IMG/VR virus record: IMGVR_UViG_3300050821_009835
Span: 124,001 to 188,000 of that record
Reading direction: 5' to 3' (one strand)
DNA: 64,000 nt
The notes under the pieces are model-generated. The model ran no database searches. It was not told the origin of the DNA and saw only the letters and a program-made list of their open reading frames with translations. The translations under genes were made by a program, and so were the position numbers. Positions 5,221 through 60,525 of this stretch are shown here, in pieces (the first letter of the stretch is position 1; each line of letters begins with the position of its first letter).

Positions 5221-6719
5221 GATAAGACTCCTTTTGAAACCACTTTTGACACGTACTCTAAAGGGTACGGTATTTGGGGAATTGGCTTATCCAAGAAGCC
5301 AGAAAGGGCAGCCCAATGATCATTCCCCTCCATGTTCATGACTAACAAATCTTGTGGACGATCTTTAAAATATTCTAGAACTTCAATGTTATGACGGCGG
5401 TAGATTTCCAACATCACATCAGGATTAAAGTCTTTTTGGCCATATAATGCTGAATGAAGTTGGTTGCTGATAGGATAGATATCCCATAAATAGCGGGTTG
5501 GGTTATACCTTGGATCCCACAATCTCGAAATGCTCTTCAACCACTTCTCCTCATCACGAATTGTCAAAATGAATTTGGAGCCGGGGTAAGCTCGGTCCAA
5601 TTTCTGATAAAGAAGAGGAATCGGTAAATCGCAAAGAGAATACCAGCGTTCGAGTGTTTTTGAGCGATATCGCATGACCGTAAAATTGCCACAGGAACAT
5701 TTGCGAATTGTATCTTCAGTAGCACCATATTGCACTGAAGTTTTGCATTCACTATCTCCATGGTGGCCGTGAAAATGCGCGTTGTAATCATGACCACAAG
5801 TGCACAACGGGGAGGTCATCTCGTGCCAAATTAGCGGGGCTTCCCCATTCCCCCAGTGTAGGCTGTCAAATCCAAGAATCTGAAAAGCTTTGTGCAATGA
5901 ATTGGTGGCAGTTTTATGCATGCCAATGCCAAAAACTCTAGTGGGAACCGCTTTCAATTCGGTGGGATTGGAGCCAAAATTCTTAAACACTGTGCCGAGA
6001 CCAAATTTACCGAAATTAACTACGGTTTCAACGCGATTAGAAAGCACCCTGGCCTCATGCTTATTTTCATATTGGCGTGCGTGCGGATATTCTCTAAAGC
6101 GAACCTCGGAACTATGGGGAATTGTTTCCAAGTAGCGATTATCTATGTGTCGCATTGTGTAACCCATGCGCTCTAGGCGATAAATCAAATCCATGTCCTC
6201 TCCTCGCCAAGTAGAGAAGATTTCATCATAACCTCCAGCTTTAACAAAATCCTGCGCCCTAATAGCTAATCTACCCGCATATCCTCGAGCAGGACGAAGG
6301 GGGCCATGCGGAAGACTGTGAATCAAGGGGAAGTCAGGACAAAGGAAAATTCCAGATTCATTAAATTTTTCATTTATGAAACGAGCAAAGCCGTGGCCAG
6401 TGAAATTATCAGCATCAAGAGTCACTAGAATATCCGCACCTTCTAGGATACCCAGTCTTGCTGCTATGTTCTTTGCGTGAGCTACGTGAAAAGGTACATC
6501 TTCTCTGTAACTATAGACATTTAGATAGCCATTAAGAATTGTAAGTTCGTGAACAGTTTGAAGATATTCTAGAAGCCCGTCTTGACTATTGTAGTCCAGA
6601 AGAACGAATTTACAATTAGGATAATTAGCATTATCTGCTAAATTTCGAGGCAAGGTTTGTTTAATATGCTGAGCGCGACCTTTGCAGGTAATACAGAAAA
6701 CAATGCTTCTATCAATCAT
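5208..6719 (-). CDS. GT2/GT7-type glycosyltransferase fused to a sulfotransferase (Sulfotransfer_4-like)
   Basis: N-terminal CITCKGR, TLDADN, GGYDE..W.GEDMDL; C-terminal VFGIGMHKTATNSL PAPS loop and YPGSKFILTIRD. Confidence 0.8.
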   Translation of the reverse strand: MIDRSIVFCITCKGRAQHIKQTLPRNLADNANYPNCKFVLLDYNSQDGLLEYLQTVHELTILNGYLNVYSYREDVPFHVAHAKNIAARLGILEGADILVTLDADNFTGHGFARFINEKFNESGIFLCPDFPLIHSLPHGPLRPARGYAGRLAIRAQDFVKAGGYDEIFSTWRGEDMDLIYRLERMGYTMRHIDNRYLETIPHSSEVRFREYPHARQYENKHEARVLSNRVETVVNFGKFGLGTVFKNFGSNPTELKAVPTRVFGIGMHKTATNSLHKAFQILGFDSLHWGNGEAPLIWHEMTSPLCTCGHDYNAHFHGHHGDSECKTSVQYGATEDTIRKCSCGNFTVMRYRSKTLERWYSLCDLPIPLLYQKLDRAYPGSKFILTIRDEEKWLKSISRLWDPRYNPTRYLWDIYPISNQLHSALYGQKDFNPDVMLEIYRRHNIEVLEYFKDRPQDLLVMNMEGNDHWAALSGFLDKPIPQIPYPLEYVSKVVSKGVLSCSM

Positions 6720-15179: not shown

Positions 15180-15765
15180 AATAATTTGGTGTCTGTGAAT
15201 GACAGTTAGGGCACAAATATACCAGATTCTCACGCTGTTCATTGCCGTGATTCCCGTCTACGTGGTGAATCTCTAAAACCAATTCCCGATTACACCACCA
15301 ACTACTCAAACCACAGTATCCACAGACACTCCCCTGCTCACGTAAGACTCTACGGTACCTTTCCGCCCTCGGAGCCTTTTCCCAGGACGCCCCAGCTATC
15401 CTAGCTCTAACTGTGTCGTGCCCTCTGTGCCTTGTTTCTAAGGTAAAAGGAATTCTAACTTCTTTCGGAACCTCATCTTTACAGTGAAGAACGTGAGCAC
15501 AATACCCCTGTTTATCTTTTTTACGCCACCAACCCTTACAGTTTGAGCATTGATACTTATAGCGTCGAGGATCAAACCCAGTTTGAAACTGATTTCCTCC
15601 TATAGTACGCCCCTTCAAACTTAGAGCTATTTTAAGATTGATTTCTCCTCGATTTTCTCTTGTGCTAAAACCTCGAGCACATTTCTCTCCACAGAACCGT
15701 CCGCTCCCGTAGGAGCCGTCATGCGAACTTCCACAATTTTCACATTCTCTAAATGTGTCTGCCAT
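15136..15765 (-). CDS. HNH homing endonuclease whose 3' end overlaps tRNA-Leu(CAA)
   Basis: CGYCG..LEIHHVDGNHGN..NLVYLCPNCHSQT; N-terminal CENCG..GRFC..C zinc module. Confidence 0.85.
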   Translation of the reverse strand: MADTFRECENCGSSHDGSYGSGRFCGEKCARGFSTRENRGEINLKIALSLKGRTIGGNQFQTGFDPRRYKYQCSNCKGWWRKKDKQGYCAHVLHCKDEVPKEVRIPFTLETRHRGHDTVRARIAGASWEKAPRAERYRRVLREQGSVCGYCGLSSWWCNRELVLEIHHVDGNHGNEQRENLVYLCPNCHSQTPNYCRVGGNGKRARLKP

Positions 15766-45141: not shown

Positions 45142-45215
45142 TGGCGGCTATACCGGGGCTCGAACCCGGTTCTGCTGATTGAGAATCAACAATCCTACCC
45201 ATAGACGATATAGCC
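45142..45215 (-). tRNA. tRNA-Glu(CTC)
   Basis: Cloverleaf; loop TTCTCAA; G73; CCA. Confidence 0.85.
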
Positions 45216-45219
45216 GAGA

Positions 45220-45295
45220 TGGTGGCATACAGGGGAGTCGAACCCCTCATCATCTGGGTGAAGGCCAGAGGACCAAACCGATAGTCGGGTATGCC
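45220..45295 (-). tRNA. tRNA-Glu(TTC), C33 variant
   Basis: Loop CCTTCAC; CCA. Confidence 0.75.
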
Positions 45296-45329
45296 AAAAC
45301 TAACTTGTTTGTGAGCTAACAGTACAAAC

Positions 45330-45405
45330 TGGTGGAGACGGCGAGATTCGAACTCGCGGCCTCATCGTTGCGAACGATGCGCTCTCCCAACTGAGCTACA
45401 TCCCC
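45330..45405 (-). tRNA. tRNA-Ala(CGC)
   Basis: G3:U70; loop TTCGCAA; CCA. Confidence 0.92.
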
Positions 45406-45412
45406 CAAATTT

Positions 45413-45486
45413 TGGTGCTCCGTAAGCGAATCGAACGCTTGCTTTCTGCATGTCGAACAGACGCTCTACCACTGAGCTAACAGAGC
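45413..45486 (-). tRNA. tRNA-Val(GAC), C33 variant
   Basis: Loop TCGACAT; CCA. Confidence 0.85.
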
Positions 45487-45488
45487 TT

Positions 45489-45959
45489 TTACTTCGTAAC
45501 CGGGACTACCTGAGAAGGGATCACCACTTCTGTCCCTGGTACAGTCGATCCGCCTGTTTGGGGTGGAGTCGCTGTAGTAATGGTCGTACTCGTTGTCCCC
45601 GTACTGGTGGAGGGTGCTGGACTCGGAGCATCCGGGCTCATTGTCTTCAATAATGCGCCAAATGCTGAACCAAATGCACCTGTATCAAACGTCAAACCAT
45701 TCAGAGCAATCCCGTTATCCGAAGCAATTGTCCCGTTTTGGATCAACTGCACCACCGTGTAGTACATGTGCTCGGCACGATAAAAAAAGAATACAGAAGC
45801 GACTGCTAGAATTATGATGTTCCCGCCACGAGAATTCGTAATCGTAGCAAAATCCTGCCACACTCCTACGGAGGGGAGCTTCCCCTGATACCACATTACC
45901 ATGAAGGAGAGATATACTACAATCACTCCCGCCCACATTTCCCAAGTTATCGTCACCAT
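45489..45959 (-). CDS. Multi-pass membrane protein with Thr/Pro tail (holin-like?)
   Basis: Three hydrophobic segments; GAGG RBS. Confidence 0.55.
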   Translation of the reverse strand: MVTITWEMWAGVIVVYLSFMVMWYQGKLPSVGVWQDFATITNSRGGNIIILAVASVFFFYRAEHMYYTVVQLIQNGTIASDNGIALNGLTFDTGAFGSAFGALLKTMSPDAPSPAPSTSTGTTSTTITTATPPQTGGSTVPGTEVVIPSQVVPVTK

Positions 45960-45993
45960 TTCGCACCTCTACTATCGAGGCTCGAAAGTCAAA

Positions 45994-46800
45994 TCAATCG
46001 TAGAGTCTCCAAAGTTTTTCTACTGGCAACCCAGTTACCGAAGCCACTTCTGAAAACGTGGGCTGCAATTCTTTTTCAAAAAGAAATTGTACTTGAGGAC
46101 ATTGCTGCTGCTTAGCACTCGTTCTTGCAGAAGGCCAGCCCTTGATTTCTACCAAATTTCCATCTACTAAAAAATCCGGGTAGAAATTGTATCGCACTCC
46201 CTCAAACTCGTAAGATAATGGCCGCCAATTTCTTTCTACTTTCTTTCCTAGCTGCAACGAATGAATGAGATAGGCACATTCCCAGGTGGACTGTACAAAC
46301 ATACCATGGTAGTATCCTGATTTACTACGGCCTCCACCTTCCCGTATTCCACCGCAGCGACCTTCAGCCTTTGCTTTGGCTAAACCTTCTTCATTGTGCA
46401 ATTTTCTACACGAAAGACAAACTGTCCAATTCCTAGGTATTTCTTGCCCACAAGCACAACGTTTAGGAGGCTTAGGAGGTAATAAAGAAACCCTATCATG
46501 GTGAGCCTGAGATATCCTTCTGCGAGTTGTTAACAAACACGGTCTTGTATTCGAACAAGACACAGAACAAGTTAACCCCTTACGTCTAGAAAATTGTTTT
46601 GGGGTGCATTCCAACAAAAACTGCTTTCCACAAACAACGCACTGAACCGGGTAAAGAACCTTTCGTTTGTTTTTCTTTGCCACTGCCAAATTCAAGGCTA
46701 CTCTGTCTGGACGTTTGAAGCAATTACGTATGTGCGCTCCCCAACTTCGCCCATCCTTAGGAAATCCTTCCCTACTTAGTCCACAGTACTGACAAGTCAT
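45994..46800 (-). CDS. TnsA-like PD-(D/E)XK homing endonuclease
   Basis: QSTWE, FYPDFLVDGNLVEIKGW; N-terminal zinc modules. Confidence 0.75.
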   Translation of the reverse strand: MTCQYCGLSREGFPKDGRSWGAHIRNCFKRPDRVALNLAVAKKNKRKVLYPVQCVVCGKQFLLECTPKQFSRRKGLTCSVSCSNTRPCLLTTRRRISQAHHDRVSLLPPKPPKRCACGQEIPRNWTVCLSCRKLHNEEGLAKAKAEGRCGGIREGGGRSKSGYYHGMFVQSTWECAYLIHSLQLGKKVERNWRPLSYEFEGVRYNFYPDFLVDGNLVEIKGWPSARTSAKQQQCPQVQFLFEKELQPTFSEVASVTGLPVEKLWRLYD

Positions 46801-46863
46801 TGGTTTACAACCTCTATAATCAACTCAGATAGTTGTAAATCAAGACTCAACAGTCGCTTATTT

Positions 46864-46942
46864 TGGAGCGGAAGATCAGATTTGAACTGACGAAATGCTG
46901 CGTTGGAAGCGCAGTGCCTTAACCAGACTTGGCGACTCCCGC
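46864..46942 (-). tRNA. tRNA-Gly(TCC)
   Basis: Loop CTTCCAA; U73; CCA. Confidence 0.9.
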
Positions 46943-46951
46943 AAAACATTC

Positions 46952-47325
46952 GCGCTGAACCTATAGCCAGGATTTTGTCGTGGACGACCATTCCTCTAGG
47001 CCACCCGTTACCGTGTGGCTCAAGCTCTCTACCCGCTGATTCCCCACTTCTTACGAAGTGAACGGGCCGGATCAGCCCTGCTCAGCCTATTTGAGATTGC
47101 TCCACGTGGAGATTGCCCGTTTCACCCTATGCTATGGCTGCGAGCCCCTCCCGCATTTAATCCCCAGTCGAGGGAACCAAGTCACAGACTCGTCTCTGTT
47201 GCTCTAATCGTCATTACGCCTTTCAGCGTAACGCTAGGGAGTTACCCTACACGCCATCCTGTGGAGTCCTGAACTTCCTCGGTAAGCAATTCCATCCTGC
47301 TTAACGCGATCGTCCAGTTCAACGC
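46952..47325 (-). ncRNA. rnpB: RNase P RNA, A-type-like, lacking P13/P14
   Basis: GAGGAAGTTCAGG (CR-I), ACAGAGAC (CR-II), GGGTGAAAC (CR-III), CTCCACGTGGAGCAA, AGAGGAAT (CR-IV), ACAAAATCCTGGCTA (CR-V); P1 GCGTTGAACT/GGTTCAGCGC. Confidence 0.92.
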
Positions 47326-47363
47326 AAATTTCAAAGATCTAAACCAAAGTTGCCTGAGCAACT

Positions 47364-47600
47364 TTAATTTTGGTGGAGAACACGGGATTCGAACCCGTCT
47401 GTATTCCGCATTGCAAGTGCAGCGGCCACTCCCAGCAGTCCCGATCCCCCTAACCCCCTTAATCGTTCAATCTCATTGGCAGCTTCTTCAAGTAAATCAG
47501 CCAATCTATCAGGCTTCCCTTCTTGCACGCTCTTCCGTGTAGAAATCTGACGTCTTATCTCAGCTCGCTTGCGTAATCTCTCAATGAGATCTTCGTTCAT
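47364..47600 (-). CDS. Conserved-type phage hypothetical protein whose frame runs through a tRNA-Ala
   Basis: ERLRKRAEIRRQI..RKSVQEGKPDR.ADLLEEAA.EIE motif. Confidence 0.55.
   Translation of the reverse strand: MNEDLIERLRKRAEIRRQISTRKSVQEGKPDRLADLLEEAANEIERLRGLGGSGLLGVAAALAMRNTDGFESRVLHQN
47371..47449 (-). tRNA. Atypical tRNA-Ala(TGC)
   Basis: G3:U70; loop CTTGCAA; CCA; weak D arm; G8. Confidence 0.7.
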
Positions 47601-47604
47601 AAAT

Positions 47605-47680
47605 TGGTGGAGCTAGTCGGGTTTGAACCGACGGCCTCTTTCATGCCATGAAAGCGATCTCCCAACTGATCTATAGCCCC
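47605..47680 (-). tRNA. tRNA-Ala(GGC)
   Basis: GGGGCTA 5' end, G3:U70; loop ATGGCAT; CCA. Confidence 0.9.
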
Positions 47681-47683
47681 AAA

Positions 47684-47854
47684 CTCGAGGGGTCTCGGGG
47701 ATTTCACGAAACGTTCCAGCCGTCGCTGTCTATCCCAGACCCTGAAAGCCCTAACGTGCACCTACTGGGACTCTGCTCTGCCGCTGAGCTACACCCCTGT
47801 CGGGATGGTTGGATTCGAACCAACGACCTGAGTCCGATCGATGCACAGGCTTTC
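47684..47854 (-). ncRNA. Circularly permuted tRNA-like (YrlA/Y-RNA-like) RNA, copy 1, with 3' extension
   Basis: Order: long stem, T arm (GTTGG TTCGAAT CCAAC), loop-closed acceptor stem, D arm (GCTC AGCGGCA GAGC), long stem. Confidence 0.75.
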
Positions 47855-47858
47855 GAAA

Positions 47859-47937
47859 TGGAGATGAAGGCAGGATTTGAACCTGCGATTACAGAGGTTG
47901 CAGCTCTGCCCCTTTAGCCAGACTTGGGTACTTCATC
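47859..47937 (-). tRNA. tRNA-Cys(GCA)
   Basis: Loop CTGCAAC; U73; CCA. Confidence 0.9.
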
Positions 47938-48579
47938 ATAAAGTCGTACGAAATCTTGTCCGTACTTGCCAGAAACATGATCCAAAATACCCTGCATCTG
48001 TTCCCACATTAGAAGATGAATCTTCCTGCTTCCAACGGCATCCAGTTTTCTCTACAAGATATCCTTGTCCACTACAAAACCCTTAATCTCTACTAAACTC
48101 CCATCCGCCAACTTGAAATCCGGTGTGTAGAAATGAACCACTTCATTACGGTCTAAGTAACCGAATCTTTCCCGATTTCTTTCAAAAGGAACACCGTGTT
48201 CCAATTGATAAATTACCCAAGCAAGTTCCCAAGAAGAGTCGCACCAAATTCCTTGATATCGGCCTTTAATGCCTCGCCCACCTCCCTGGTTGCCCAATCC
48301 TAATCGCTTCCTAGTATCACCAATCTTTTTCTTAGTTTCTTCGGACGGCGGTCCTGCTTTACTCCCGGTTCTAGCCCTTGCTGCTGCTTCTACTAAAGCC
48401 CGAACCTTTTCGTTTTCTATAGTCAACCCCTTATTCCAAGGTATCGTGCGTTCAGCTGGCTTAAAACTTACTCCTTTGCCATGCATCCTCCAAATGTGAC
48501 TTGTTAAGCCAAATAAGGACATTTCTTTCCGGCAAATAAAACAGCAAACAAAACCACCCTTAGAGCCTGTTGTTGGCAT
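47914..48579 (-). CDS. TnsA-like PD-(D/E)XK homing endonuclease with an in-frame TAG at 48052-48054
   Basis: CDSSWE..YTPDF..LVEIKGF; frame continues 46 codons past the TAG (..YGQDFVRLYDE) to a TAA inside tRNA-Cys. Confidence 0.75.
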
Positions 48580-48613
48580 AACTCCCTCTAAATAAGAGTA
48601 GGAAGTTTAAAAC

Positions 48614-48646
48614 CAGCTCTGTGCCTTACCACTTGGCCAACGGTCC
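48614..48646 (-). pseudogene. Orphan 5' half of a tRNA (Cys-like), truncated at the anticodon
   Basis: GGACCGTTGGCCAAGTGGTAAGGCACAGAGCTG followed directly by the endonuclease leader. Confidence 0.65.
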
Positions 48647-48659
48647 ATCTAAACTTTTT

Positions 48660-48734
48660 TGGCGGTGACGACGAGAGTCGAACTCGCATCCTACTCCGTG
48701 ACAGGGAGGCACTCTACCATTAAGCTACGTCACC
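48660..48734 (-). tRNA. tRNA-Asp(GTC)
   Basis: Loop CTGTCAC; G73; CCA. Confidence 0.9.
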
Positions 48735-48744
48735 GCATAAAACT

Positions 48745-48818
48745 TGGAGCGGGATAGGGTAATCGAAACCCTTTCTCCGGTCTGGCAGACCAGGGCACAC
48801 CCAATGTACCAATCCCGC
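48745..48818 (-). tRNA. tRNA-Gly(GCC)
   Basis: Loop CTGCCAG; U73; CCA. Confidence 0.88.
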
Positions 48819-48874
48819 TTTAAACGATGCGAATCTATACGCTCAAGACGTTCGTCGCGCCTAAATCTAAATTT

Positions 48875-48951
48875 TGGTACAGGGTGAGGGACTCGAACCC
48901 CCGACATTCTCCTTGTAAGGAAGACGCTTCTACCAACTGAGCTAACCCTGT
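48875..48951 (-). tRNA. tRNA-Val(TAC)
   Basis: Loop CTTACAA; CCA. Confidence 0.9.
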
Positions 48952-49177
48952 ACATTCTATCGTAAAATAGAAAAGACGCCATTAACAGGCGTCCTCGTTT
49001 TACGATTCGGATGTCTTGTTTTACTCTCCGAATCCCTCCGAGGACACTTGCCCCTCCGCCGCGACGCAGCATTCAGCTGCAGTACCGCTATCTCGCACGA
49101 AAGTGTTATTGGTCGTCATGTTATAATAATACCTAGGTATTTGGAAAATCGGGTATAACTAGTGAAATAAAAACTAA

Positions 49178-49203
49178 AGGCCCGAATCTTCTTCTTCGGG
49201 CCT
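49178..49203 (-). terminator. Intrinsic terminator
   Basis: AGGCCCGAA/TTCGGGCCT hairpin followed by TTAGTTTTTATTT. Confidence 0.7.
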
Positions 49204-49239
49204 TCTACTGCCGATGCCGTCGATCGTTACAGGACAACA

Positions 49240-49275
49240 TTAAAAGTTGAAAGGAACCATGATGGTTTTTCGCAT
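49240..49275 (-). CDS. 11-aa small ORF (MRKTIMVPFNF)
   Basis: Strong AAGGAGG RBS; sits between the large ncRNA and the terminator. Confidence 0.4.
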   Translation of the reverse strand: MRKTIMVPFNF

Positions 49276-49715
49276 AGTTATTGTCCTCCTTTTCTTAAAT
49301 TGCACAAAATTCGATCCCCAGCGAGGCCTATGGTATCCCCGCTTCTTTAAAGAGAGCCAACACCCTCCTCCGTTATTGTAGTCCTCCGGTGTTGGCCTTG
49401 GGCGGAGATCTCTGCCCCGTCGTCGACCGGGTTGGCTCCCTCCGCCTCAATTCACTCGGGTGCATCCTACTTCCAGCGGCAATTTGGTTCCGTTTTAGAC
49501 CTAAAGACTTCTTAGGAATCCAGTTTCGGCAGCACCCGCGCTTTTGCGTTTACATCGTACGCTGTGGACGTGTACCTGACCCGCTCCGACCCGAACGTGG
49601 CCGAACGATCGTTGGCAAACGGCGGCTAACGCTTCCCACAGCTAAACTTAATCCAGGAACGCCCTCCTGCGCTCAACAAGGCAGTTATGCACTATACACC
49701 GTGTTCCCGAACCCT

Positions 49716-49791
49716 TGGTGGAGGATGCAGGGATCGAACCTGCGACCTATTGCTTGCAAAGCAATCGCTCTCCCAACTGAGCTAATCCCCC
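49716..49791 (-). tRNA. tRNA-Ala(TGC)
   Basis: Canonical; G3:U70; loop TTTGCAA; CCA. Confidence 0.93.
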
Positions 49792-49887
49792 GACAGCAGC
49801 GTGTCCGAATACCGCGTTGCTCTGCGTTCACAGACTTCGATTCCGACTCGCACCTGACCTCCGGGTAACTTCCCTCATAGTACTCAG

Positions 49888-49938
49888 AAAGTACAGAAAA
49901 TACAAAAGTACAGAAAATACAAAAGTACAGAAAATACA
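49888..49938. repeat. Three exact tandem copies of the 17-nt unit AAAGTACAGAAAATACA
   Basis: Read directly from the sequence. Confidence 0.9.
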
Positions 49939-50314
49939 TCGGCTACAGTAACCCTGCACGTTGAACTATTGCCAGTTAGACTTCGGGACGTTGCCACCGT
50001 CGCACCTATGATGCTTCGGGTTATGCGGGTCATGACTCCCGTGGCAGTGGGTTTTAGCCCTAACCAACCGTGCACAGTATGCAGCCGAATCTTAAGCCTT
50101 AGAAGAACGCGGCGGGAAACTTCCTAGGCAAGTCCCGCCGCATCTCTATCCGTTTCTCCGCCAGGACTGCGCGAGTACTCGGGCTGCTCGTTGCGCGTAT
50201 ACTCAGCGCGATTACCTCTGGATGACCGCTCTGGTGGTCCTGCGTTGCTCTTCGTTACTAGCTGTTAGGCCTCACGGGTGCTGCCCGCTCTGGTCCTCCT
50301 GCGCTTCATCCAAA

Positions 50315-50487
50315 CTCGAGAGGTCTAGGGGATTTCACGATAGTTCCAGCCGTCGCTGTCTATCCCAGACCCTGGAGCTGTCAACGCATCGTCTACTGAG
50401 GTCTGCTCTTCCATTGCGCTACATCCCCTTAACGGAGAAGGAGGGAATCGAACCCCCGACCTGACCTTATCGACGATACTCTGCTCC
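50315..50487 (-). ncRNA. Circularly permuted tRNA-like (YrlA/Y-RNA-like) RNA, copy 2, with 3' extension
   Basis: T arm GGGGG TTCGATT CCCTC; acceptor-like stem closed by GTTAA; D arm GCGC AATGGAA GAGC; compensatory stem changes versus copy 1. Confidence 0.75.
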
Positions 50488-50494
50488 AAACTTA

Positions 50495-50810
50495 TGAAGC
50501 GATTCCTGTTGGTACTTGGTAGCTATCGAGTCTACCCTAAGCACGAATCGACCAAACCAACGCGATACCACACGGCAATCTTTGCTGCTGGCTCCCATGA
50601 TTAACGACCTTTGGGTATTAGTATCCGGAACGGTCGTCTTACATAACCTTGACGGTCGTCTTACATAACCTTGACGGATCTGCCAGCAATTCTTTGCGAG
50701 GTAGGCAATGCATTTGTACAGCCAACCAGTCCTCGACTTCTGAGCTTCGTAGTCATCCGAAGACGCTTACCGTTTCCGGCCTGTCTCCGGTTCACTCACT
50801 CAGCTTCTAT
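50495..50810 (-). ncRNA. Candidate ~315-nt structured ncRNA
   Basis: Ends GAAGC/GCTTC; stems CTGAG/CTCAG, TGCTGGC/GCCAGCA, GATTC/GAATC, GGTAG/CTACC; GAAA and TTCG tetraloops. Confidence 0.5.
50630..50673. repeat. Two exact tandem copies of the 22-nt unit ACGGTCGTCTTACATAACCTTG
   Basis: Read directly from the sequence. Confidence 0.9.
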
Positions 50811-50819
50811 GTTTAGATA

Positions 50820-51101
50820 CTACGGGGCTGCAATAGAAATCGGGTAGTCAATATTCTGACACCGAATTCCCAAAAGAATTTCACCCCAATACAACTCACA
50901 TTTCCCGCAAAGCTCGCGTACCTTTAGCCAAGGTCGTTGACCATTCATGGCTTCCACGAAATCTCCAGTACAAAGCCCATACTTTTTCTCATTATCATTG
51001 GGTTCATCAATATAGCATTCGTGCTTTGGCGTTGTTGGGCTGGAGGAATCTTTAATGAGGCAGTGCGTTGGATGCGAAGTTGAAATTTTTGAATGTTTCA
51101 T
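50820..51101 (-). CDS. Hypothetical Cys-rich protein
   Basis: ATGA overlap with the upstream gene. Confidence 0.45.
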   Translation of the reverse strand: MKHSKISTSHPTHCLIKDSSSPTTPKHECYIDEPNDNEKKYGLCTGDFVEAMNGQRPWLKVRELCGKCELYWGEILLGIRCQNIDYPISIAAP

Positions 51102-51358
51102 TGTGCTCCCTGGGGCGACCCAATAGTTTTGACGACTCGCGGCTTAATCTGTTCATACAGCTGAGTCATCTGTTGGAAATCCCGGGCAGCATTCAACATC
51201 GTTTGTTGAGTTGCGTACACGGCATACATAAACTCACAACGAGCGCATGCTCCTTTGACACCACCGCGCCCTTCTTTTTCTGGGTTATATCGCGTATGTT
51301 TGTCGCAATGAATCTTAACTCGACTGTTCATCTTCAACCTTGTTCTTATGTTTAACAT
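51098..51358 (-). CDS. Hypothetical protein
   Basis: AGGAGG RBS; C.KH..YNP...G...C.RC motif. Confidence 0.5.
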   Translation of the reverse strand: MLNIRTRLKMNSRVKIHCDKHTRYNPEKEGRGGVKGACARCEFMYAVYATQQTMLNAARDFQQMTQLYEQIKPRVVKTIGSPQGAQ

Positions 51359-58196: not shown

Positions 58197-59312
58197 ATGC
58201 TATATACCATGAATGACAGCATTTTCAGAATACAGTCCATCGACCGTAATTTGATCCATTGGGAAGACCATCTTCTGGATCTCAGTCCTTGCGAAAAAAT
58301 TGGTGGCATGTGGTTTAAACGAGAGGATTTCTTTGCCCCTTTAGGATTTGGTGGTATCAATGGCAGCAAACTCCGTGTTTGCATTTGGCTAATTAACGAA
58401 GCACTCAAGCAAGGGGCCAAGGGGGTTTCGCATGGTGCTGTGATAGGTTCCCCTCAACATCCCATGGTAGCTTGTATTGCTGCTCATTACAATGTTCCAG
58501 TGATTGATTGTATTGGTACTAAGAAACCACTTGAACACGAAACTTTAGCGACGGCTGCATGGATGGGGGCAGAATTCCGTTCGTTTAATCCGGGCTTTGC
58601 AGCTACATTAAACAGCAAGGCCGAACAGATTGCAAAAGAACTTAGATATTTCCATTTAGAAACTAACATCACTGTAGATCAGGAGAAGAATCCTGCGGCT
58701 CGGGTGGAAGCATTTCACAAGGTCGGCAGTGTGCAGGTCCAAAATATTCCTGATCACATTGAGAACATCATCGTGCCAGCGGGTAGTTGCAACAGTGTGA
58801 CCTCTGTCTTATACGGGATTGCCCAATATCGCCCCAAGAATCTCCAGAATGTTATCCTCATGGGCATTGGTTCTTGCGGTAGTTCTGATCCGACTTACAT
58901 CCATCGTCGTCTGCAAATTATCGAAGGAGTAAGTGGAGTAAACTCTCAGGACATGTTTGGTTGGTTCCTGAACTACAAACACAACAATCCTAGCCAAAGC
59001 GCGGCCACTTGGCCTCGTAAATTCTCACCTATCTACACATTAACCCATTATGATGTAAATGGGGGCTGTGGACAGTGTAAGAAGTGCGAAGGAGGGTATT
59101 GCACCTACAACGATCTGATGCCCTATCGATTTAATGATCTGGATTTTCACCCGAGGTATGAGGGTAAGATGATGTGTTTCATGGGAGATCATCTATCCGA
59201 ATTCCAACAGTATCTCAATGACAAGACACTCTTCTGGATTGTTGGATCTAAGCCATCTGCGGCAGCGATGGCTCCGGTATTGAAGGAGAAATTTGGGGAT
59301 TTTTATGAGTGA
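58197..59312 (+). CDS. PLP-dependent enzyme (fold type II, ACC-deaminase-like) of the DNA hypermodification cassette
   Basis: WFKRED..GGINGSKLR PLP lysine, GSPQ, VPAGSCNS, FHPRYEGK, LFWIVG. Confidence 0.8.
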   Translation: MLYTMNDSIFRIQSIDRNLIHWEDHLLDLSPCEKIGGMWFKREDFFAPLGFGGINGSKLRVCIWLINEALKQGAKGVSHGAVIGSPQHPMVACIAAHYNVPVIDCIGTKKPLEHETLATAAWMGAEFRSFNPGFAATLNSKAEQIAKELRYFHLETNITVDQEKNPAARVEAFHKVGSVQVQNIPDHIENIIVPAGSCNSVTSVLYGIAQYRPKNLQNVILMGIGSCGSSDPTYIHRRLQIIEGVSGVNSQDMFGWFLNYKHNNPSQSAATWPRKFSPIYTLTHYDVNGGCGQCKKCEGGYCTYNDLMPYRFNDLDFHPRYEGKMMCFMGDHLSEFQQYLNDKTLFWIVGSKPSAAAMAPVLKEKFGDFYE

Positions 59313-60525
59313 TCTTTTCTACAGCCCGTTCGATCAAGAAGTCATAGGGCTTGACAAAATACTCGTGTGTTCAGCAGATCATACGACTCCAGGCCGCTAT
59401 TGTGAACTTTTGGGCTTGTTTGAACAACAGGATCTTAAAGAGGGCATGGATTTTCGCAAGCCGGAATTCCGAAGGGAAGTATTTCTACGTTTCTACGAGT
59501 TCTGCCTGAAGTATCGGCTGCACGCCGGGGCTAGTCTACCCTACATGACGTTCCCGTTCTTGAGCAAAGAAATTGGTTGGGGGCGGGAGGAGTTGCTGTG
59601 GTTCGTTTTCATCAACGGGAACACTCAACATCCGTTGACTTCTTGGGTTATTTTCAATCAGTTCCCTGACTTTGCTAATCTAGATATCCCGGCTCTGGAT
59701 GCTTGGTACAACAAGGAATGGCCTCGTCTTGAATTTGACACAGATCGTCGACACCAGAAACGCGATTTTATCAAATCGGTTACTCGCTATAAGGAACTCT
59801 GTGGATGTAGAGATCAAGCGTGGCTTTTTCACAACCAAATAGTAAGCGACGACCCACTTGAGAATTTTCAAGTTGTATGGGATATGGTGCGTAAGGATTT
59901 CTATTCTTTTGGTCGTATGAGTACGTTTTCTTATCTTGAGTACCTGCGTATCGCTCGGCTGAACATTGAGCCGAACTCTTTGTTTCTAGAAGACATATCC
60001 GGGAGTAAATCGCTTCGTAATGGTTTGGCAAAAGTATTGGGCCGGGATGACCTCGATTGGGGTGGCCCGGATAACCCTACAGGGTTCGAAGGAAAGTATA
60101 CTCCTCAGATGATGGATTGGTTGAAAAAAGAAGGTGCCATCCTTCTTGAGGAAGCTAAGAAAAGATTCAAAGGCCGGGATTTCGCTCAGGATGTGACTTA
60201 TTTTACGCTGGAATCGGAGTTCTGTACTTACAAGGGCTGGCATCGCTTAAATCGGCGTTACCCTGGAGTTTATGCTGATATTTTTCATGGAAGAATTAAG
60301 AAAGCCGAGGCCCGTTGGCCCGAAGAGGATTTTTCGGTCTTTTGGAAGATGCGTCAGCAAATGTTGCCTCAGTATTTGCGTCTTGAGGATAGTCCTGGGG
60401 ATCCTGGTTTAAAGCCTGAGAAACAAAATCACTACCGAGAAACTGGGCAGGTTATCATGATGTTGGACTGGTCCTGTTTTAAGAATGATTTTAACGATAG
60501 AATTTTGAGTATTGAAGCAACATGA
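59293..60525 (+). CDS. Amino acid:DNA transferase (aGPT-pyrophosphorylase clade 2-like)
   Basis: W..F..GNTQ, FDTDRR, FGRMSTFSYLE, SGSKS.RNGL, FTLES..C.YK, RRYPG.Y.D; flanked by a PLP enzyme and a kinase. Confidence 0.75.
   Translation: MGIFMSDLFYSPFDQEVIGLDKILVCSADHTTPGRYCELLGLFEQQDLKEGMDFRKPEFRREVFLRFYEFCLKYRLHAGASLPYMTFPFLSKEIGWGREELLWFVFINGNTQHPLTSWVIFNQFPDFANLDIPALDAWYNKEWPRLEFDTDRRHQKRDFIKSVTRYKELCGCRDQAWLFHNQIVSDDPLENFQVVWDMVRKDFYSFGRMSTFSYLEYLRIARLNIEPNSLFLEDISGSKSLRNGLAKVLGRDDLDWGGPDNPTGFEGKYTPQMMDWLKKEGAILLEEAKKRFKGRDFAQDVTYFTLESEFCTYKGWHRLNRRYPGVYADIFHGRIKKAEARWPEEDFSVFWKMRQQMLPQYLRLEDSPGDPGLKPEKQNHYRETGQVIMMLDWSCFKNDFNDRILSIEAT

What the first reader, a model, noticed from the sequence alone, without database searches (positions are those of the whole stretch)
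49315..50311. ~1 kb ornate non-coding element with a tRNA-Ala embedded inside it
Seen: about 1 kb with no credible ORF, dense in long helices on both sides of a perfect tRNA-Ala(TGC). There are internal GCAGGAG/CCAGAGCGG repeats in the 5' part and a 3 x 17-nt linker expansion. Established: giant phage ncRNAs such as GOLLD and ROOL lie among tRNA genes, and GOLLD can contain tRNAs. Inference: a GOLLD/ROOL-class or new giant RNA, possibly cut by the co-encoded RNase P. It could instead be two separate RNAs flanking the tRNA.
Basis: partly seen in the sequence, partly recalled or inferred. Interest (0 to 1): 0.8.

Follow-up and report, generated by a model that had tools for sequence, protein, structure and literature searches.

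The report
Small-RNA mosaic around phage tRNA-Ala
The 1-kb stretch is not one giant RNA but a string of separate pieces in the tRNA cluster of a soil giant phage; one piece is a new, conserved 150-base folded RNA that always travels with an alanine tRNA, and most of the rest is unconserved spacer.

Summary
The sequence features are real, all on the minus strand. There is no credible ORF, a 71-bit tRNA-Ala(UGC), a perfect 3x17-nt tandem repeat and a 22-nt imperfect direct repeat. Folding energies are not better than shuffles. No GOLLD, ROOL or OLE match appears at E<=10.

The stretch is the middle of a ~1.6-kb non-coding island between a conserved promoter-like block (~50,820-50,848) and a terminator (49,176-49,205). 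The contig is a 265-kb soil phage.

Only two parts of the finding are conserved. One is the tRNA. The other is a self-closed 150-nt module, M1 (50,088-49,939). M1 has 10 distinct relatives and 10-12 base pairs with compensatory changes (0 of 500 shuffles reach this), and no Rfam hit. In every relative M1 lies 4-132 nt 3' of a tRNA-Ala(UGC). In three contigs (two distinct sequences) a tRNA-Glu follows it directly. Only here does it lie 5' of the tRNA.

Segment A (50,311-50,100) and the 400-nt trailer (49,715-49,309) have no homologs in about 100 related loci. Metatranscriptome contigs cover 49,309-49,917 and 50,468-50,788 but not the part between.

Verdict: a chain of separately folding RNAs, probably cut apart by tRNA-processing enzymes. 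M1 is a new family of unknown function.

The parts
50816..50848 (-). Conserved promoter-like block at the head of the non-coding island (outside the finding).
   Evidence: It is collinear with L004:14783-14815. The exact motif is unique in the window. RNA contigs from two runs start about 25-30 nt downstream, at 50788/50789. Promoter function is inferred.
50490..50810 (-). 5' domain RNA of unknown function, containing a perfect 22-nt x 2.2 tandem repeat at 50630-50677.
   Evidence: nhmmer finds about 96 nt conserved in L003/L004 (E 1.5e-9). Exact metatranscriptome contigs cover 50468-50788 (X2) and 50617-50789 (X3). MFE z reaches about -3 at 50870-50691.
50312..50487 (-). Y RNA-like (YrlA-like) tRNA-mimic element. 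It abuts the 5' edge of the finding and is a paralog of 47681-47853.
   Evidence: Rfam RF02553 gives a full-length match at 30.6 bits; the paralog scores 44.6. Both are below the gathering score of 69. The last ~65 nt are 94-100% identical between the copies (D10/D12). Three closing helices are kept by different sequences in the two copies (read by eye).
50100..50311 (-). Segment A, lineage-specific non-coding sequence. It holds the 22-nt imperfect direct repeat (50223-50244 and 50282-50303) and a GC-rich 12-bp hairpin (50108-50140).
   Evidence: The repeat is (D16). There is no homolog by nhmmer at E<=1 in about 100 related loci, and no Rfam hit. RNA depth is zero in X2 and X3. The paralogous Y-like copy is followed at this position by tRNA-Ala(GGC).
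49939..50088 (-). M1, a self-closed ~150-nt structured RNA module. It is a rod of helices P1-P5 ending in a three-way junction with hairpins P6 and P7. This is a new family.
   Evidence: 83-90% identical copies occur in L007, L083 and L106, and 77-80% copies in L087, L089, L090, L100, L101 and L102. The covariance model scores 143-210 bits. On the model-fitted alignment, 12 of 48 pairs change on both sides, against 5.8 +/- 1.6 in shuffles (0 of 500) and 0-3 in slid controls. An independent MAFFT plus RNAalifold run gives the same fold, with 10 of 44 pairs compensatory. No frame is open across homologs. There is no Rfam hit in the window or in five relatives.
49888..49938 (-). Perfect 3 x 17-nt U-rich tandem repeat. 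It is an expansion of M1's own 3' tail.
   Evidence: TRF reports period 17, 3.0 copies, 100% matches. The repeat starts at the base after M1's last paired base. Its first 9 nt equal the single-copy tail seen in L083. DNA and RNA assemblies both break here.
49792..49887 (-). Linker and 5' leader of the tRNA.
   Evidence: There is no homolog. It is covered, contiguously with the tRNA, by exact RNA contigs 49309-49917 (X2) and 49707-49871 (X3). A TTGTAT-17-TACTAT promoter-like site was read by eye at about 49906-49878; the scan did not call it.
49716..49791 (-). tRNA-Ala(UGC) with an encoded CCA.
   Evidence: ARAGORN. Rfam tRNA 71.1 bits, E 1.6e-13.
49309..49715 (-). 3' trailer domain. It is lineage-specific, transcribed and rich in GGAGG. 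Two short blocks (49553-49524 and 49473-49457) are shared with L004.
   Evidence: RNA contig 49309-49917 has depth 8.8, against 570 for the RNase P RNA contig. nhmmer finds no homolog. The two collinear blocks match L004:15600-15628 and 15666-15682 (E 0.07 and 0.8 in a small search space), and occur only in that phage lineage in IMG/VR. GGAGG occurs 5 times against 1.15 +/- 1.0 expected (1 of 500 shuffles; post-hoc).
49176..49205 (-). Intrinsic terminator-like hairpin plus U-run that closes the island. An 11-codon mini-ORF with an AGGAGG lies just upstream, at 49240-49275.
   Evidence: The terminator scan gives 11 pairs, 6 of them G-C, with a U-rich tail. The mini-ORF was read. No RNA contig covers 49180-49308.

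Best explanation
The stretch is the middle of a ~1.6-kb non-coding island at the head of the tRNA/RNase P RNA gene cluster of a 265-kb soil phage. It is transcribed on the minus strand.

It is a chain of separately folding units, not one RNA machine. In order these are:
- a Y RNA-like tRNA mimic, just outside the 5' edge;
- a 210-nt lineage-specific segment;
- M1, a self-closed 150-nt RNA with covariation-supported helices;
- a recently expanded U-rich 3x17-nt linker;
- a canonical tRNA-Ala(UGC);
- a 400-nt lineage-specific trailer.

The units are most likely made as one or two precursors and cut apart by the tRNA-maturation machinery. RNase P, whose RNA subunit the phage itself encodes 2.4 kb downstream, would cut at tRNA and tRNA-like 5' ends. 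RNase E/Z plus exonucleases would trim the 3' ends. M1 would then be released as a discrete small RNA, as the two stable non-tRNA RNAs of the phage T4 tRNA operon are (T4 from my own knowledge).

What is shown: modularity, M1's conserved fold, its constant linkage to tRNA-Ala, lack of conservation of the rest, and patchy RNA coverage.

What is inferred: co-transcription, the cleavage sites, and that M1 acts in trans. My best guess is that it binds a protein or RNA through its invariant apical loop and junction.
For: Modularity:
- M1 occurs in 10 distinct relatives with entirely different flanks.
- The Y-like element is duplicated elsewhere in the window, next to a different tRNA.
- Relatives carry other small hairpin modules that come and go.

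M1 fold:
- 12 of 48 pairs are compensatory, against 5.8 +/- 1.6 in shuffles (0 of 500) and 0-3 in slid controls.
- An independent alignment gives the same fold.
- P1 pairs M1's two ends, so it is a closed domain.

Linkage to tRNA processing:
- In all relatives M1 starts 4-132 nt after the CCA of tRNA-Ala(UGC), and within 4-14 nt in seven of the ten distinct relatives.
- In L089, L105 and L100 a tRNA-Glu(CUC) starts about 10 nt after M1.

Non-conservation: nhmmer finds nothing for segment A, the linker or the trailer.

RNA:
- Exact metatranscriptome contigs cover 49309-49917 and 50468-50788. Depth is zero over 49976-50373.
- Coverage is non-uniform, unlike the flat 25x of the DNA run. The phage RNase P RNA contig is at depth 570.

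The RNase P RNA itself scores 170 bits.
Against: - No read-level 5'/3' ends are available. The contigs are assemblies, and both DNA and RNA contigs break at the tandem repeat, so a continuous precursor cannot be shown or excluded.
- M1 itself was not found in any listed RNA run. Its expression is therefore unproven. Loss of small structured RNAs in library preparation is only an assumption.
- All M1 homologs were retrieved through one exact 18-mer, so the invariance of that loop is partly an ascertainment effect. Two other patterns returned the same IMG/VR set.
- In the window M1 lies upstream of the tRNA, so its 5' end here is not set by a canonical tRNA.
- Lack of detectable homologs does not prove that segment A and the trailer are functionless.
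Confidence: 0.65

Rival explanations
1. One giant, fast-evolving GOLLD/ROOL-like RNA of about 1 kb or more, whose 5' and 3' domains flank an embedded tRNA as in some GOLLD RNAs, working as a single folded particle.
For: It lies in a phage, inside a tRNA island, with a tRNA in the middle of about 1 kb without ORFs. GOLLD has a variable 5' region and can carry tRNAs in its linker. An RNA contig joins the tRNA to the 3' domain.
Against: - No GOLLD, ROOL or OLE hit at E<=10.
- GOLLD's defining conserved 3' domain has no counterpart: the trailer here has no homolog, even in phages whose RNR is 67-78% identical.
- M1 exists in relatives without either flank.
- RNA depth is zero over 49976-50373, and the covered part has mRNA-like depth (8.8 against 570 for RNase P RNA).
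- MFE is not better than shuffles.
Confidence: 0.06
2. A two-piece (permuted) tmRNA. The tRNA-like element at 50487-50420 would be the acceptor piece, and segment A plus part of M1 (to about 50008) would be the coding piece with a tag reading frame.
For: ARAGORN at 90% of its normal threshold calls a permuted tmRNA at 50522-50008. Rfam tmRNA models give weak hits over the tRNA-like part (14.8-18.3 bits). The 7-bp acceptor-like stem of this copy has G3:U70 (read).
Against: - ARAGORN at its default threshold finds no tmRNA.
- The Rfam scores are far below the gathering score of 47.
- The proposed 31-residue tag ends in an atypical way and runs through a GC hairpin.
- The paralogous copy has G3:C70 and is followed directly by a tRNA, with no coding piece.
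- The supposed coding piece would cut through M1, which is an independent conserved module.
- There is no homolog of the tag region anywhere.
Confidence: 0.03
3. A DNA-level element, such as a replication origin, iterons, or packaging or regulatory protein sites. The direct and tandem repeats would be protein-binding sites rather than RNA features.
For: About 1.9 kb is non-coding and holds a 22-nt direct repeat, a 17-nt x3 tandem repeat and a 22-nt x2.2 tandem repeat.
Against: - The region is transcribed in patches.
- It contains a tRNA, a tRNA mimic and a covarying RNA.
- The GC-skew minimum and the switch of gene orientation lie at about 58 kb, not here.
- The repeats are absent from relatives.
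Confidence: 0.05
4. The 3' trailer (49715-49309) is a lineage-specific sponge RNA. It would display Shine-Dalgarno-like GGAGG/GGA motifs in loops to titrate a GGA-binding protein (CsrA/RsmA type) or the anti-SD of ribosomes. This is compatible with the mosaic model.
For: GGAGG occurs 5 times against 1.15 +/- 1.0 expected (1 of 500), and GGA 17 times against 11.3 (5 of 500), on the transcribed strand only. Two GGAGG motifs sit in the 23-nt loop of a 10-bp hairpin in the MFE fold. The segment is present in RNA.
Against: The test was post-hoc, on a motif noticed by eye. The segment is not conserved in relatives. There is no Rfam CsrB/Rsm-type hit. RNA depth is modest. The host and its CsrA status are unknown.
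Confidence: 0.1

Closest known systems
GOLLD RNA (Rfam RF01998) and ROOL RNA (RF03087)
   Same: They are encoded by phages and prophages, often next to tRNA islands, are large and lack ORFs. GOLLD sometimes holds tRNAs in its linker.
   Different: There is no covariance-model match at E<=10. No conserved large domain exists. Only a 150-nt module is conserved, and it occurs alone in relatives. RNA coverage does not span the stretch.
The two stable non-tRNA RNAs of the phage T4 tRNA operon (species 1 and 2, rnaC/rnaD; my own knowledge, not checked with a tool)
   Same: They are small structured RNAs of unknown function embedded among phage tRNA genes, made from the same precursor and released by tRNA-processing enzymes. 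This is the arrangement seen for M1 between tRNA-Ala and tRNA-Glu in L089, L105 and L100.
   Different: No sequence or structure comparison could be made here. M1 is specific to a small clade of soil and peat phages and is always tied to tRNA-Ala(UGC).
Spacer- or trailer-derived small RNAs of bacterial tRNA operons (for example 3'ETS-leuZ; my own knowledge)
   Same: A functional RNA cut out of the transcribed spacer right after a tRNA. In most relatives M1 starts 4-14 nt after the tRNA's CCA.
   Different: M1 is much larger, with a conserved multi-helix fold, and its target is unknown.
YrlA / bacterial Y RNAs (RF02553)
   Same: The element that abuts the finding (50487-50312) has the YrlA order of T-arm, acceptor-like hairpin and D-arm inside closing helices. 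Phage YrlA RNAs are known, and a 7-bp acceptor stem makes M. smegmatis YrlA an RNase P substrate (PMC4201824).
   Different: Its scores (30.6 and 44.6 bits) are below the gathering score of 69. No Ro60/TROVE gene was found among the 30 window ORFs scanned. It has an extra ~65-nt 3' hairpin.

Membership tests
GOLLD (RF01998) | Match to the family covariance model | tested here: not met
   No GOLLD hit at E<=10 in scans of 8 kb and 1 kb around the finding, nor at the gathering score in the whole window.
GOLLD (RF01998) | Universally conserved 3' domain next to a variable 5' region | tested here: not met
   The 3' domain (49715-49309) has no homolog in about 100 related loci. Only two short blocks are shared with one lineage.
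GOLLD (RF01998) | Phage or prophage location near tRNA genes; a tRNA may be in the linker | tested here: met
   There are 24 tRNAs in the window, and tRNA-Ala lies inside the stretch. PHROG hits show the context is a phage.
GOLLD (RF01998) | Single long transcript (>800 nt) covering the element | tested here: inconclusive
   RNA contigs cover 49309-49917 and 50468-50788, with zero depth over 49976-50373. These are assemblies at low depth, not reads.
ROOL (RF03087) / OLE (RF01071) | Match to the family covariance model | tested here: not met
   No hit at E<=10.
M1 module (family defined here) | Closed 150-nt fold (P1-P5 rod plus a P6/P7 three-way junction) kept by compensatory changes | tested here: met
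   12 of 48 pairs change on both sides, and 95.8% of cells are paired, against 27-44% in slid controls. The fold is reproduced on an independent alignment.
M1 module (family defined here) | Lies immediately 3' of tRNA-Ala(UGC) | tested here: not met
   This holds in all 10 distinct relatives. In the window M1 is 147 nt 5' of the tRNA-Ala and is preceded by segment A. The window copy is a rearranged member.
tRNA-operon stable small RNAs (T4 species 1/2 kind) | Bounded by tRNA genes so that tRNA processing releases it | tested here: met
   L089, L105 and L100 show tRNA-Ala, a 4-nt gap, M1, an ~10-nt gap, then tRNA-Glu. In the window only the 3' side is near a tRNA.
tRNA-operon stable small RNAs (T4 species 1/2 kind) | Accumulates as a discrete stable RNA | not testable with these tools
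   No RNA run holding M1 was listed, and depth over M1 is zero in X2 and X3. Small RNAs are usually lost from such libraries.
YrlA (RF02553), flanking element 50487-50312 | Covariance-model score at or above the gathering score | tested here: not met
   30.6 and 44.6 bits against a gathering score of 69, although the matches are full-length.
YrlA (RF02553), flanking element 50487-50312 | Encoded next to a Ro60/Rsr (TROVE) gene | tested here: inconclusive
   No TROVE domain in the 30 ORFs scanned. Only 64 kb of a contig of at least 265 kb is visible.
Two-piece tmRNA | Detected by ARAGORN or Rfam at normal thresholds, with a plausible tag frame | tested here: not met
   Nothing at the default threshold; a call appears only at 90% of it. 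Rfam gives 14.8-18.3 bits against a gathering score of 47. G3:U70 is present in one paralog only.

The most novel reading that the evidence does not exclude
M1 is a new class of phage RNA that is excised from tRNA-Ala precursors and acts in trans as an RNA-only assembly or a tRNA-directed factor. Its invariant 8-nt apical loop holds a 6-nt palindrome (UCAUGA), placed as in retroviral dimerisation loops, which could drive kissing-loop homodimers. Its invariant junction begins with GCA, the codon read by the tRNA-Ala(UGC) it always accompanies. On this reading M1 would be a miniature relative, in behaviour, of the self-assembling ROOL and GOLLD RNAs, or a trans-acting T-box-like tRNA binder.
Probability: 0.1. 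Interest if true: 0.7.

Novelty: new member of a known kind. Interest (0 to 1): 0.4.

Why it matters
It removes a false lead. This is not a new GOLLD/ROOL-size RNA, and long ORF-free stretches in phage tRNA islands can be mosaics of small units plus fast-evolving spacer.

It also yields a concrete new object. M1 is a 150-nt RNA with covariation-supported structure, absent from Rfam 15, found only in a clade of soil and peat giant phages, and always linked to tRNA-Ala(UGC).

With the two Y RNA-like tRNA mimics and the phage's own, strongly represented RNase P RNA, the locus suggests that these phages bring a small kit of tRNA-related non-coding RNAs and the ribozyme to mature them. That makes the role of passenger RNAs in phage tRNA operons, open since the T4 species 1/2 RNAs, testable in a second system. 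No host is in culture yet. The only cultured relative found is an Acidobacteriota phage, and it is a distant one.

Tried and rejected
- Rfam at the gathering score and at E<=10, on the window, the finding and five relatives. Only tRNA, RNase P RNA and weak YrlA/tmRNA-like hits appeared, and none lay over M1, segment A or the trailer.
- Folding-energy tests on the halves and in 120-nt windows were not significant.
- Cultured phage genomes: only tRNA-Ala hits.
- Coding potential: the ORFs hit relatives only through tRNA or M1 nucleotide identity, and no frame is open across M1 homologs.
- Decayed-tRNA hypothesis: no hidden T-arm exists in the finding apart from tRNA-Ala. Relaxed ARAGORN gives only implausible intron-containing calls.
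- A degenerate second M1 after the tRNA: cmsearch without filters gives 0.5 bits, E 1.4, which is not significant.
- M1 in cellular genomes: 16 hits to the 18-mer in GTDB species genomes, about the number expected by chance. None fits the model, and L098 and L124 share only the 22-nt word.
- M1 in the other 70 RNR-linked phage loci: none.
- A recurring phage promoter motif: the conserved upstream block is unique in the window.
- A tblastx hit of the Y-like tail to the RNase P RNA of L014 proved spurious on alignment.
- Literature searches for phage-encoded RNase P RNA and for the T4 stable RNAs found nothing usable in the held library.
Full report
**Where we are.** The window is part of IMG/VR contig UViG_3300050821_009835 (264,912 bp). 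The same sequence also sits in a 340-kb metagenome contig (L092, 100% identical over 1,901 nt). Neighbouring ORFs match phage families: ribonucleotide reductase phrog_367 at E 1e-162, and a DnaB-like helicase. The only cultured relative by helicase is the 309-kb Tunturiibacter (Acidobacteriota) phage Tunturi_5, at 26.6% identity. All genes around the finding are on the minus strand. The window holds 24 tRNA genes and a bacterial type-A RNase P RNA at 46948-47325 (170 bits against a gathering score of 100).

**Check of the observation.**
- tRNA-Ala(UGC) is at 49791-49716 on the minus strand (71.1 bits).
- The 17-nt x 3 repeat is perfect, at 49888-49938.
- The 'GCAGGAG/CCAGAGCGG' repeat is a 22-nt direct repeat, 86% identical, at 50223-50244 and 50282-50303.
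- No ORF is credible. The candidates overlap the tRNA or the conserved RNA module, and they hit relatives only through nucleotide identity, on both strands and with frame breaks.
- The claim of unusually dense helices is not borne out. MFE z-scores are -0.40 and -1.02 for the two halves. In 120-nt windows only a few local hairpins reach about -2.

**Extent.** The ORF-free stretch is larger than the finding. It runs from the end of ORF 50820-51101 down to tRNA-Val(UAC) at 48951. The block 50848-50816 is conserved with the closest RNR relative, L004. RNA contigs from two independent metatranscriptomes begin at 50788/50789. A terminator-like hairpin with a U-run lies at 49205-49176. I therefore treat roughly 50810-49176 as one non-coding island. 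Whether it is a single transcription unit is inferred.

**Test of the giant-RNA reading.** Three Rfam scans, at the gathering score and at E<=10 with lax filters, found no GOLLD, ROOL, OLE or any family other than tRNA inside 49290-50320. The 80 phage loci retrieved through the nearby ribonucleotide reductase share the same layout: RNR, a 300-aa protein, a non-coding island, then a tRNA array with RNase P RNA. Yet blastn and nhmmer find no counterpart in them for segment A (50311-50100), the linker (49930-49792) or the 3' domain (49715-49300). The one exception is two short collinear blocks in L003/L004 (49553-49524 and 49473-49457). A large ribozyme-like RNA would be expected to keep a recognisable core among phages whose RNR is 67-78% identical. 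This one does not.

**What is conserved: module M1.** A 160-nt block (50092-49930) is 83-90% identical in L007, L083 and L106. A covariance model built from three sequences, plus one exact-word scan of the metagenome collection, gave 14 matches and 11 distinct sequences at 143-210 bits.

The fold is self-closed. P1 pairs 50088-50080 with 49947-49939. A rod of P2 to P5 with internal loops follows, ending in a three-way junction with two hairpins.
- On the model-fitted alignment, 12 of 48 pairs change on both sides, against 5.8 +/- 1.6 in column shuffles (0 of 500) and 0-3 when the partners are slid. 95.8% of cells are paired, against 27-44% in the slid controls.
- An independent MAFFT plus RNAalifold run recovers the same helices, with 10 of 44 pairs compensatory.
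- Indels are not multiples of three, and every reading frame carries stops in some homolog.
- No Rfam family overlaps M1 in the window or in five relatives at E<=5.
- M1 is absent from the other RNR-linked loci and from GTDB species genomes. The 16 hits to the word there are about the number expected by chance, and none fits the model.

One caveat applies. All homologs were fished with one 18-mer from the apical hairpin, so the invariance of that hairpin is partly an ascertainment effect. Two other word searches, from the 5' and 3' strands, returned the same three IMG/VR contigs.

**Context of M1.** In all ten distinct relatives M1 lies just 3' of a tRNA-Ala(UGC). The gap from the CCA to P1 is:
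- 4 nt in L089/L105 and L100;
- 12-14 nt in L083, L088, L007 and L106;
- 30 nt in L090;
- 90 nt in L101 and L102;
- 132 nt in L087.

The longer gaps are filled by an extra hairpin. In L089, L105 and L100 a tRNA-Glu(CUC) begins about 10 nt after M1. There, M1 is a cassette between two tRNAs, and RNase P on one side and tRNA 3'-end processing on the other would release it.

The window is the exception. M1 lies 147 nt upstream of tRNA-Ala and is preceded by segment A. The sequences that follow M1 differ among relatives and include other small hairpin modules shared by only some of them. M1 is therefore an independent, portable unit.

**The tandem repeat.** The 3x17 repeat starts at the base after M1's last pair. 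Its first 9 nt equal the single-copy U-rich tail of M1 in L083. The copies are identical, so this is a recent slippage expansion of M1's tail, not a designed linker. That reading is inferred.

**The 5' boundary.** Positions 50487-50312 give a full-length match to YrlA (Y RNA-like), with the order T-arm, acceptor-like hairpin, D-arm, at 30.6 bits. A paralog at 47853-47681 scores 44.6. Both are below the gathering score of 69. The last ~65 nt of the two copies are 94-100% identical. In the tRNA-like part, three closing helices are kept by different sequences (read by eye).

The paralog is followed at once by tRNA-Ala(GGC). At the same position the copy next to the finding is followed by segment A. 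Its first 90 nt can close with a 6-bp acceptor-like stem and contain the two D-arm-like 22-nt repeats. This is my own reading, and no tRNA model supports it.

YrlA RNAs occur in phages, and one with a 7-bp acceptor stem is cut by RNase P (PMC4201824). No Ro60/TROVE ORF was seen among the 30 ORFs scanned. ARAGORN at a lowered threshold calls a permuted tmRNA over 50522-50008. I reject this for four reasons:
- nothing is called at normal thresholds;
- the paralog lacks G3:U70;
- the paralog has no coding piece;
- the call would cut through M1.

**RNA evidence.** Logan contigs of one DNA run and two soil metatranscriptomes were laid on 45200-51150.
- DNA depth is flat at about 25.
- In RNA run X2, exact contigs cover 46319-47272 (RNase P RNA, depth 570), 49309-49917 (depth 8.8), 50468-50788 (4.1) and several mRNA pieces (3-11).
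- Depth is zero over 49976-50373 and over some coding stretches. The signal is therefore RNA, not contaminating DNA.
- Run X3 independently has 49707-49871 and 50617-50789.

The 49917 end is an assembly break in the tandem repeat, because the DNA contigs break there too. But the next unitig (49909-50372), which holds M1 and segment A, is absent from both RNA runs. A search for RNA runs holding M1 listed none.

Three things follow. The tRNA is seen joined to its leader and to the 3' trailer, as a precursor. There is no evidence for one transcript across the finding. The silence over the Y-like element, segment A and M1 fits small processed RNAs being lost from such libraries, as some of the phage's tRNAs are (zero depth at 48583-48781). 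It equally fits no expression, and contigs cannot prove absence.

**The rest.** Segment A and the trailer are lineage-specific. The trailer is enriched in GGAGG on the transcribed strand: 5 against 1.15 +/- 1.0 expected, 1 of 500 shuffles (a post-hoc test). Two of these sit in the loop of a 10-bp hairpin in the MFE fold. This is a lead for a sponge-like role and nothing more. Downstream of the terminator, a small ORF (49119-49021) with its own terminator is conserved in many relatives. It is outside the finding.

**Conclusion.** The stretch is a mosaic of separately folding RNA units and unconserved spacer in a phage tRNA island, not a giant ornate RNA. Its one new, well-supported element is M1, a tRNA-Ala-linked 150-nt structured RNA. 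Its function is unknown. The most likely life cycle is co-transcription with tRNAs and release by RNase P and tRNA 3'-end processing. In kind it resembles the stable non-tRNA RNAs of the T4 tRNA operon (my own knowledge).

Noticed in passing
window 46948-47325 (-); also L004:17516-17878, L014:16327-16677, L005:16563-16891, L010:16768-17146, L007:7499-7881, L083:5068-5413: The phage encodes a full-length bacterial type-A RNase P RNA inside its tRNA array (139-267 bits across the clade, gathering score 100). In a soil metatranscriptome the exact contig over it has depth 570, against 3-11 for neighbouring genes. I found no report of phage-encoded RNase P RNA in the held library.
   Followed up: partly
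window 47681-47853 (-) and 50312-50487 (-): Two paralogous Y RNA-like (YrlA-like) tRNA mimics score 44.6 and 30.6 bits, below the gathering score of 69. Their 3' hairpins are nearly identical, and the closing helices show compensatory differences. No Ro60/TROVE gene was seen in the 30 ORFs scanned.
   Followed up: partly
window 50490-50810 (-), repeat at 50630-50677: This is another non-coding RNA domain upstream of the finding. About 96 nt are conserved in L003/L004 (nhmmer E 1.5e-9), two metatranscriptomes contain it, and it holds a perfect 22-nt x 2.2 tandem repeat.
   Followed up: partly
window 49021-49119 (-) with terminator 48972-48996: A 32-codon ORF with its own promoter-like site and terminator lies just before tRNA-Val(UAC). 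The unit is conserved at the same place in L003/4, L007, L010, L019, L083, L101, L102 and L106. In L083 the ORF is longer and looks like a small lipoprotein (lipobox read by eye).
   Followed up: partly
window 49240-49275 (-): An 11-codon mini-ORF with AGGAGG 9 nt upstream lies in a hairpin just before the terminator at 49176-49205. No RNA contig covers it and no homolog was found.
   Followed up: no
window 49309-49715 (-): GGAGG motifs are enriched on the transcribed strand (5 against 1.15 expected; 1 of 500 shuffles; post-hoc). Two lie in one 23-nt hairpin loop at about 49345-49397.
   Followed up: partly
window 47371-47449 (-): ARAGORN calls a 79-nt tRNA-Ala(UGC) here, next to the RNase P RNA. 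The Rfam tRNA model does not report it at the gathering score, and it gets a weak tmRNA-clan hit instead (20.5 bits). It is an odd tRNA-like gene.
   Followed up: no
L004:16295-16699; L083 about 5640-6010 (-): HNH-type endonuclease-like ORFs (motifs read by eye) are inserted among the tRNA genes of relatives. This fits the high turnover of content in these islands.
   Followed up: no
window 59293-60525 (+): An ORF has an amino acid:DNA transferase (ADDT) domain (Pfam PF18724, E 1.2e-18), which suggests hypermodified DNA bases in this phage.
   Followed up: no
window about 58100: The cumulative GC skew reaches its minimum here, and gene orientation switches from minus to plus between 58096 and 58197. 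This is a candidate replication origin or terminus.
   Followed up: no
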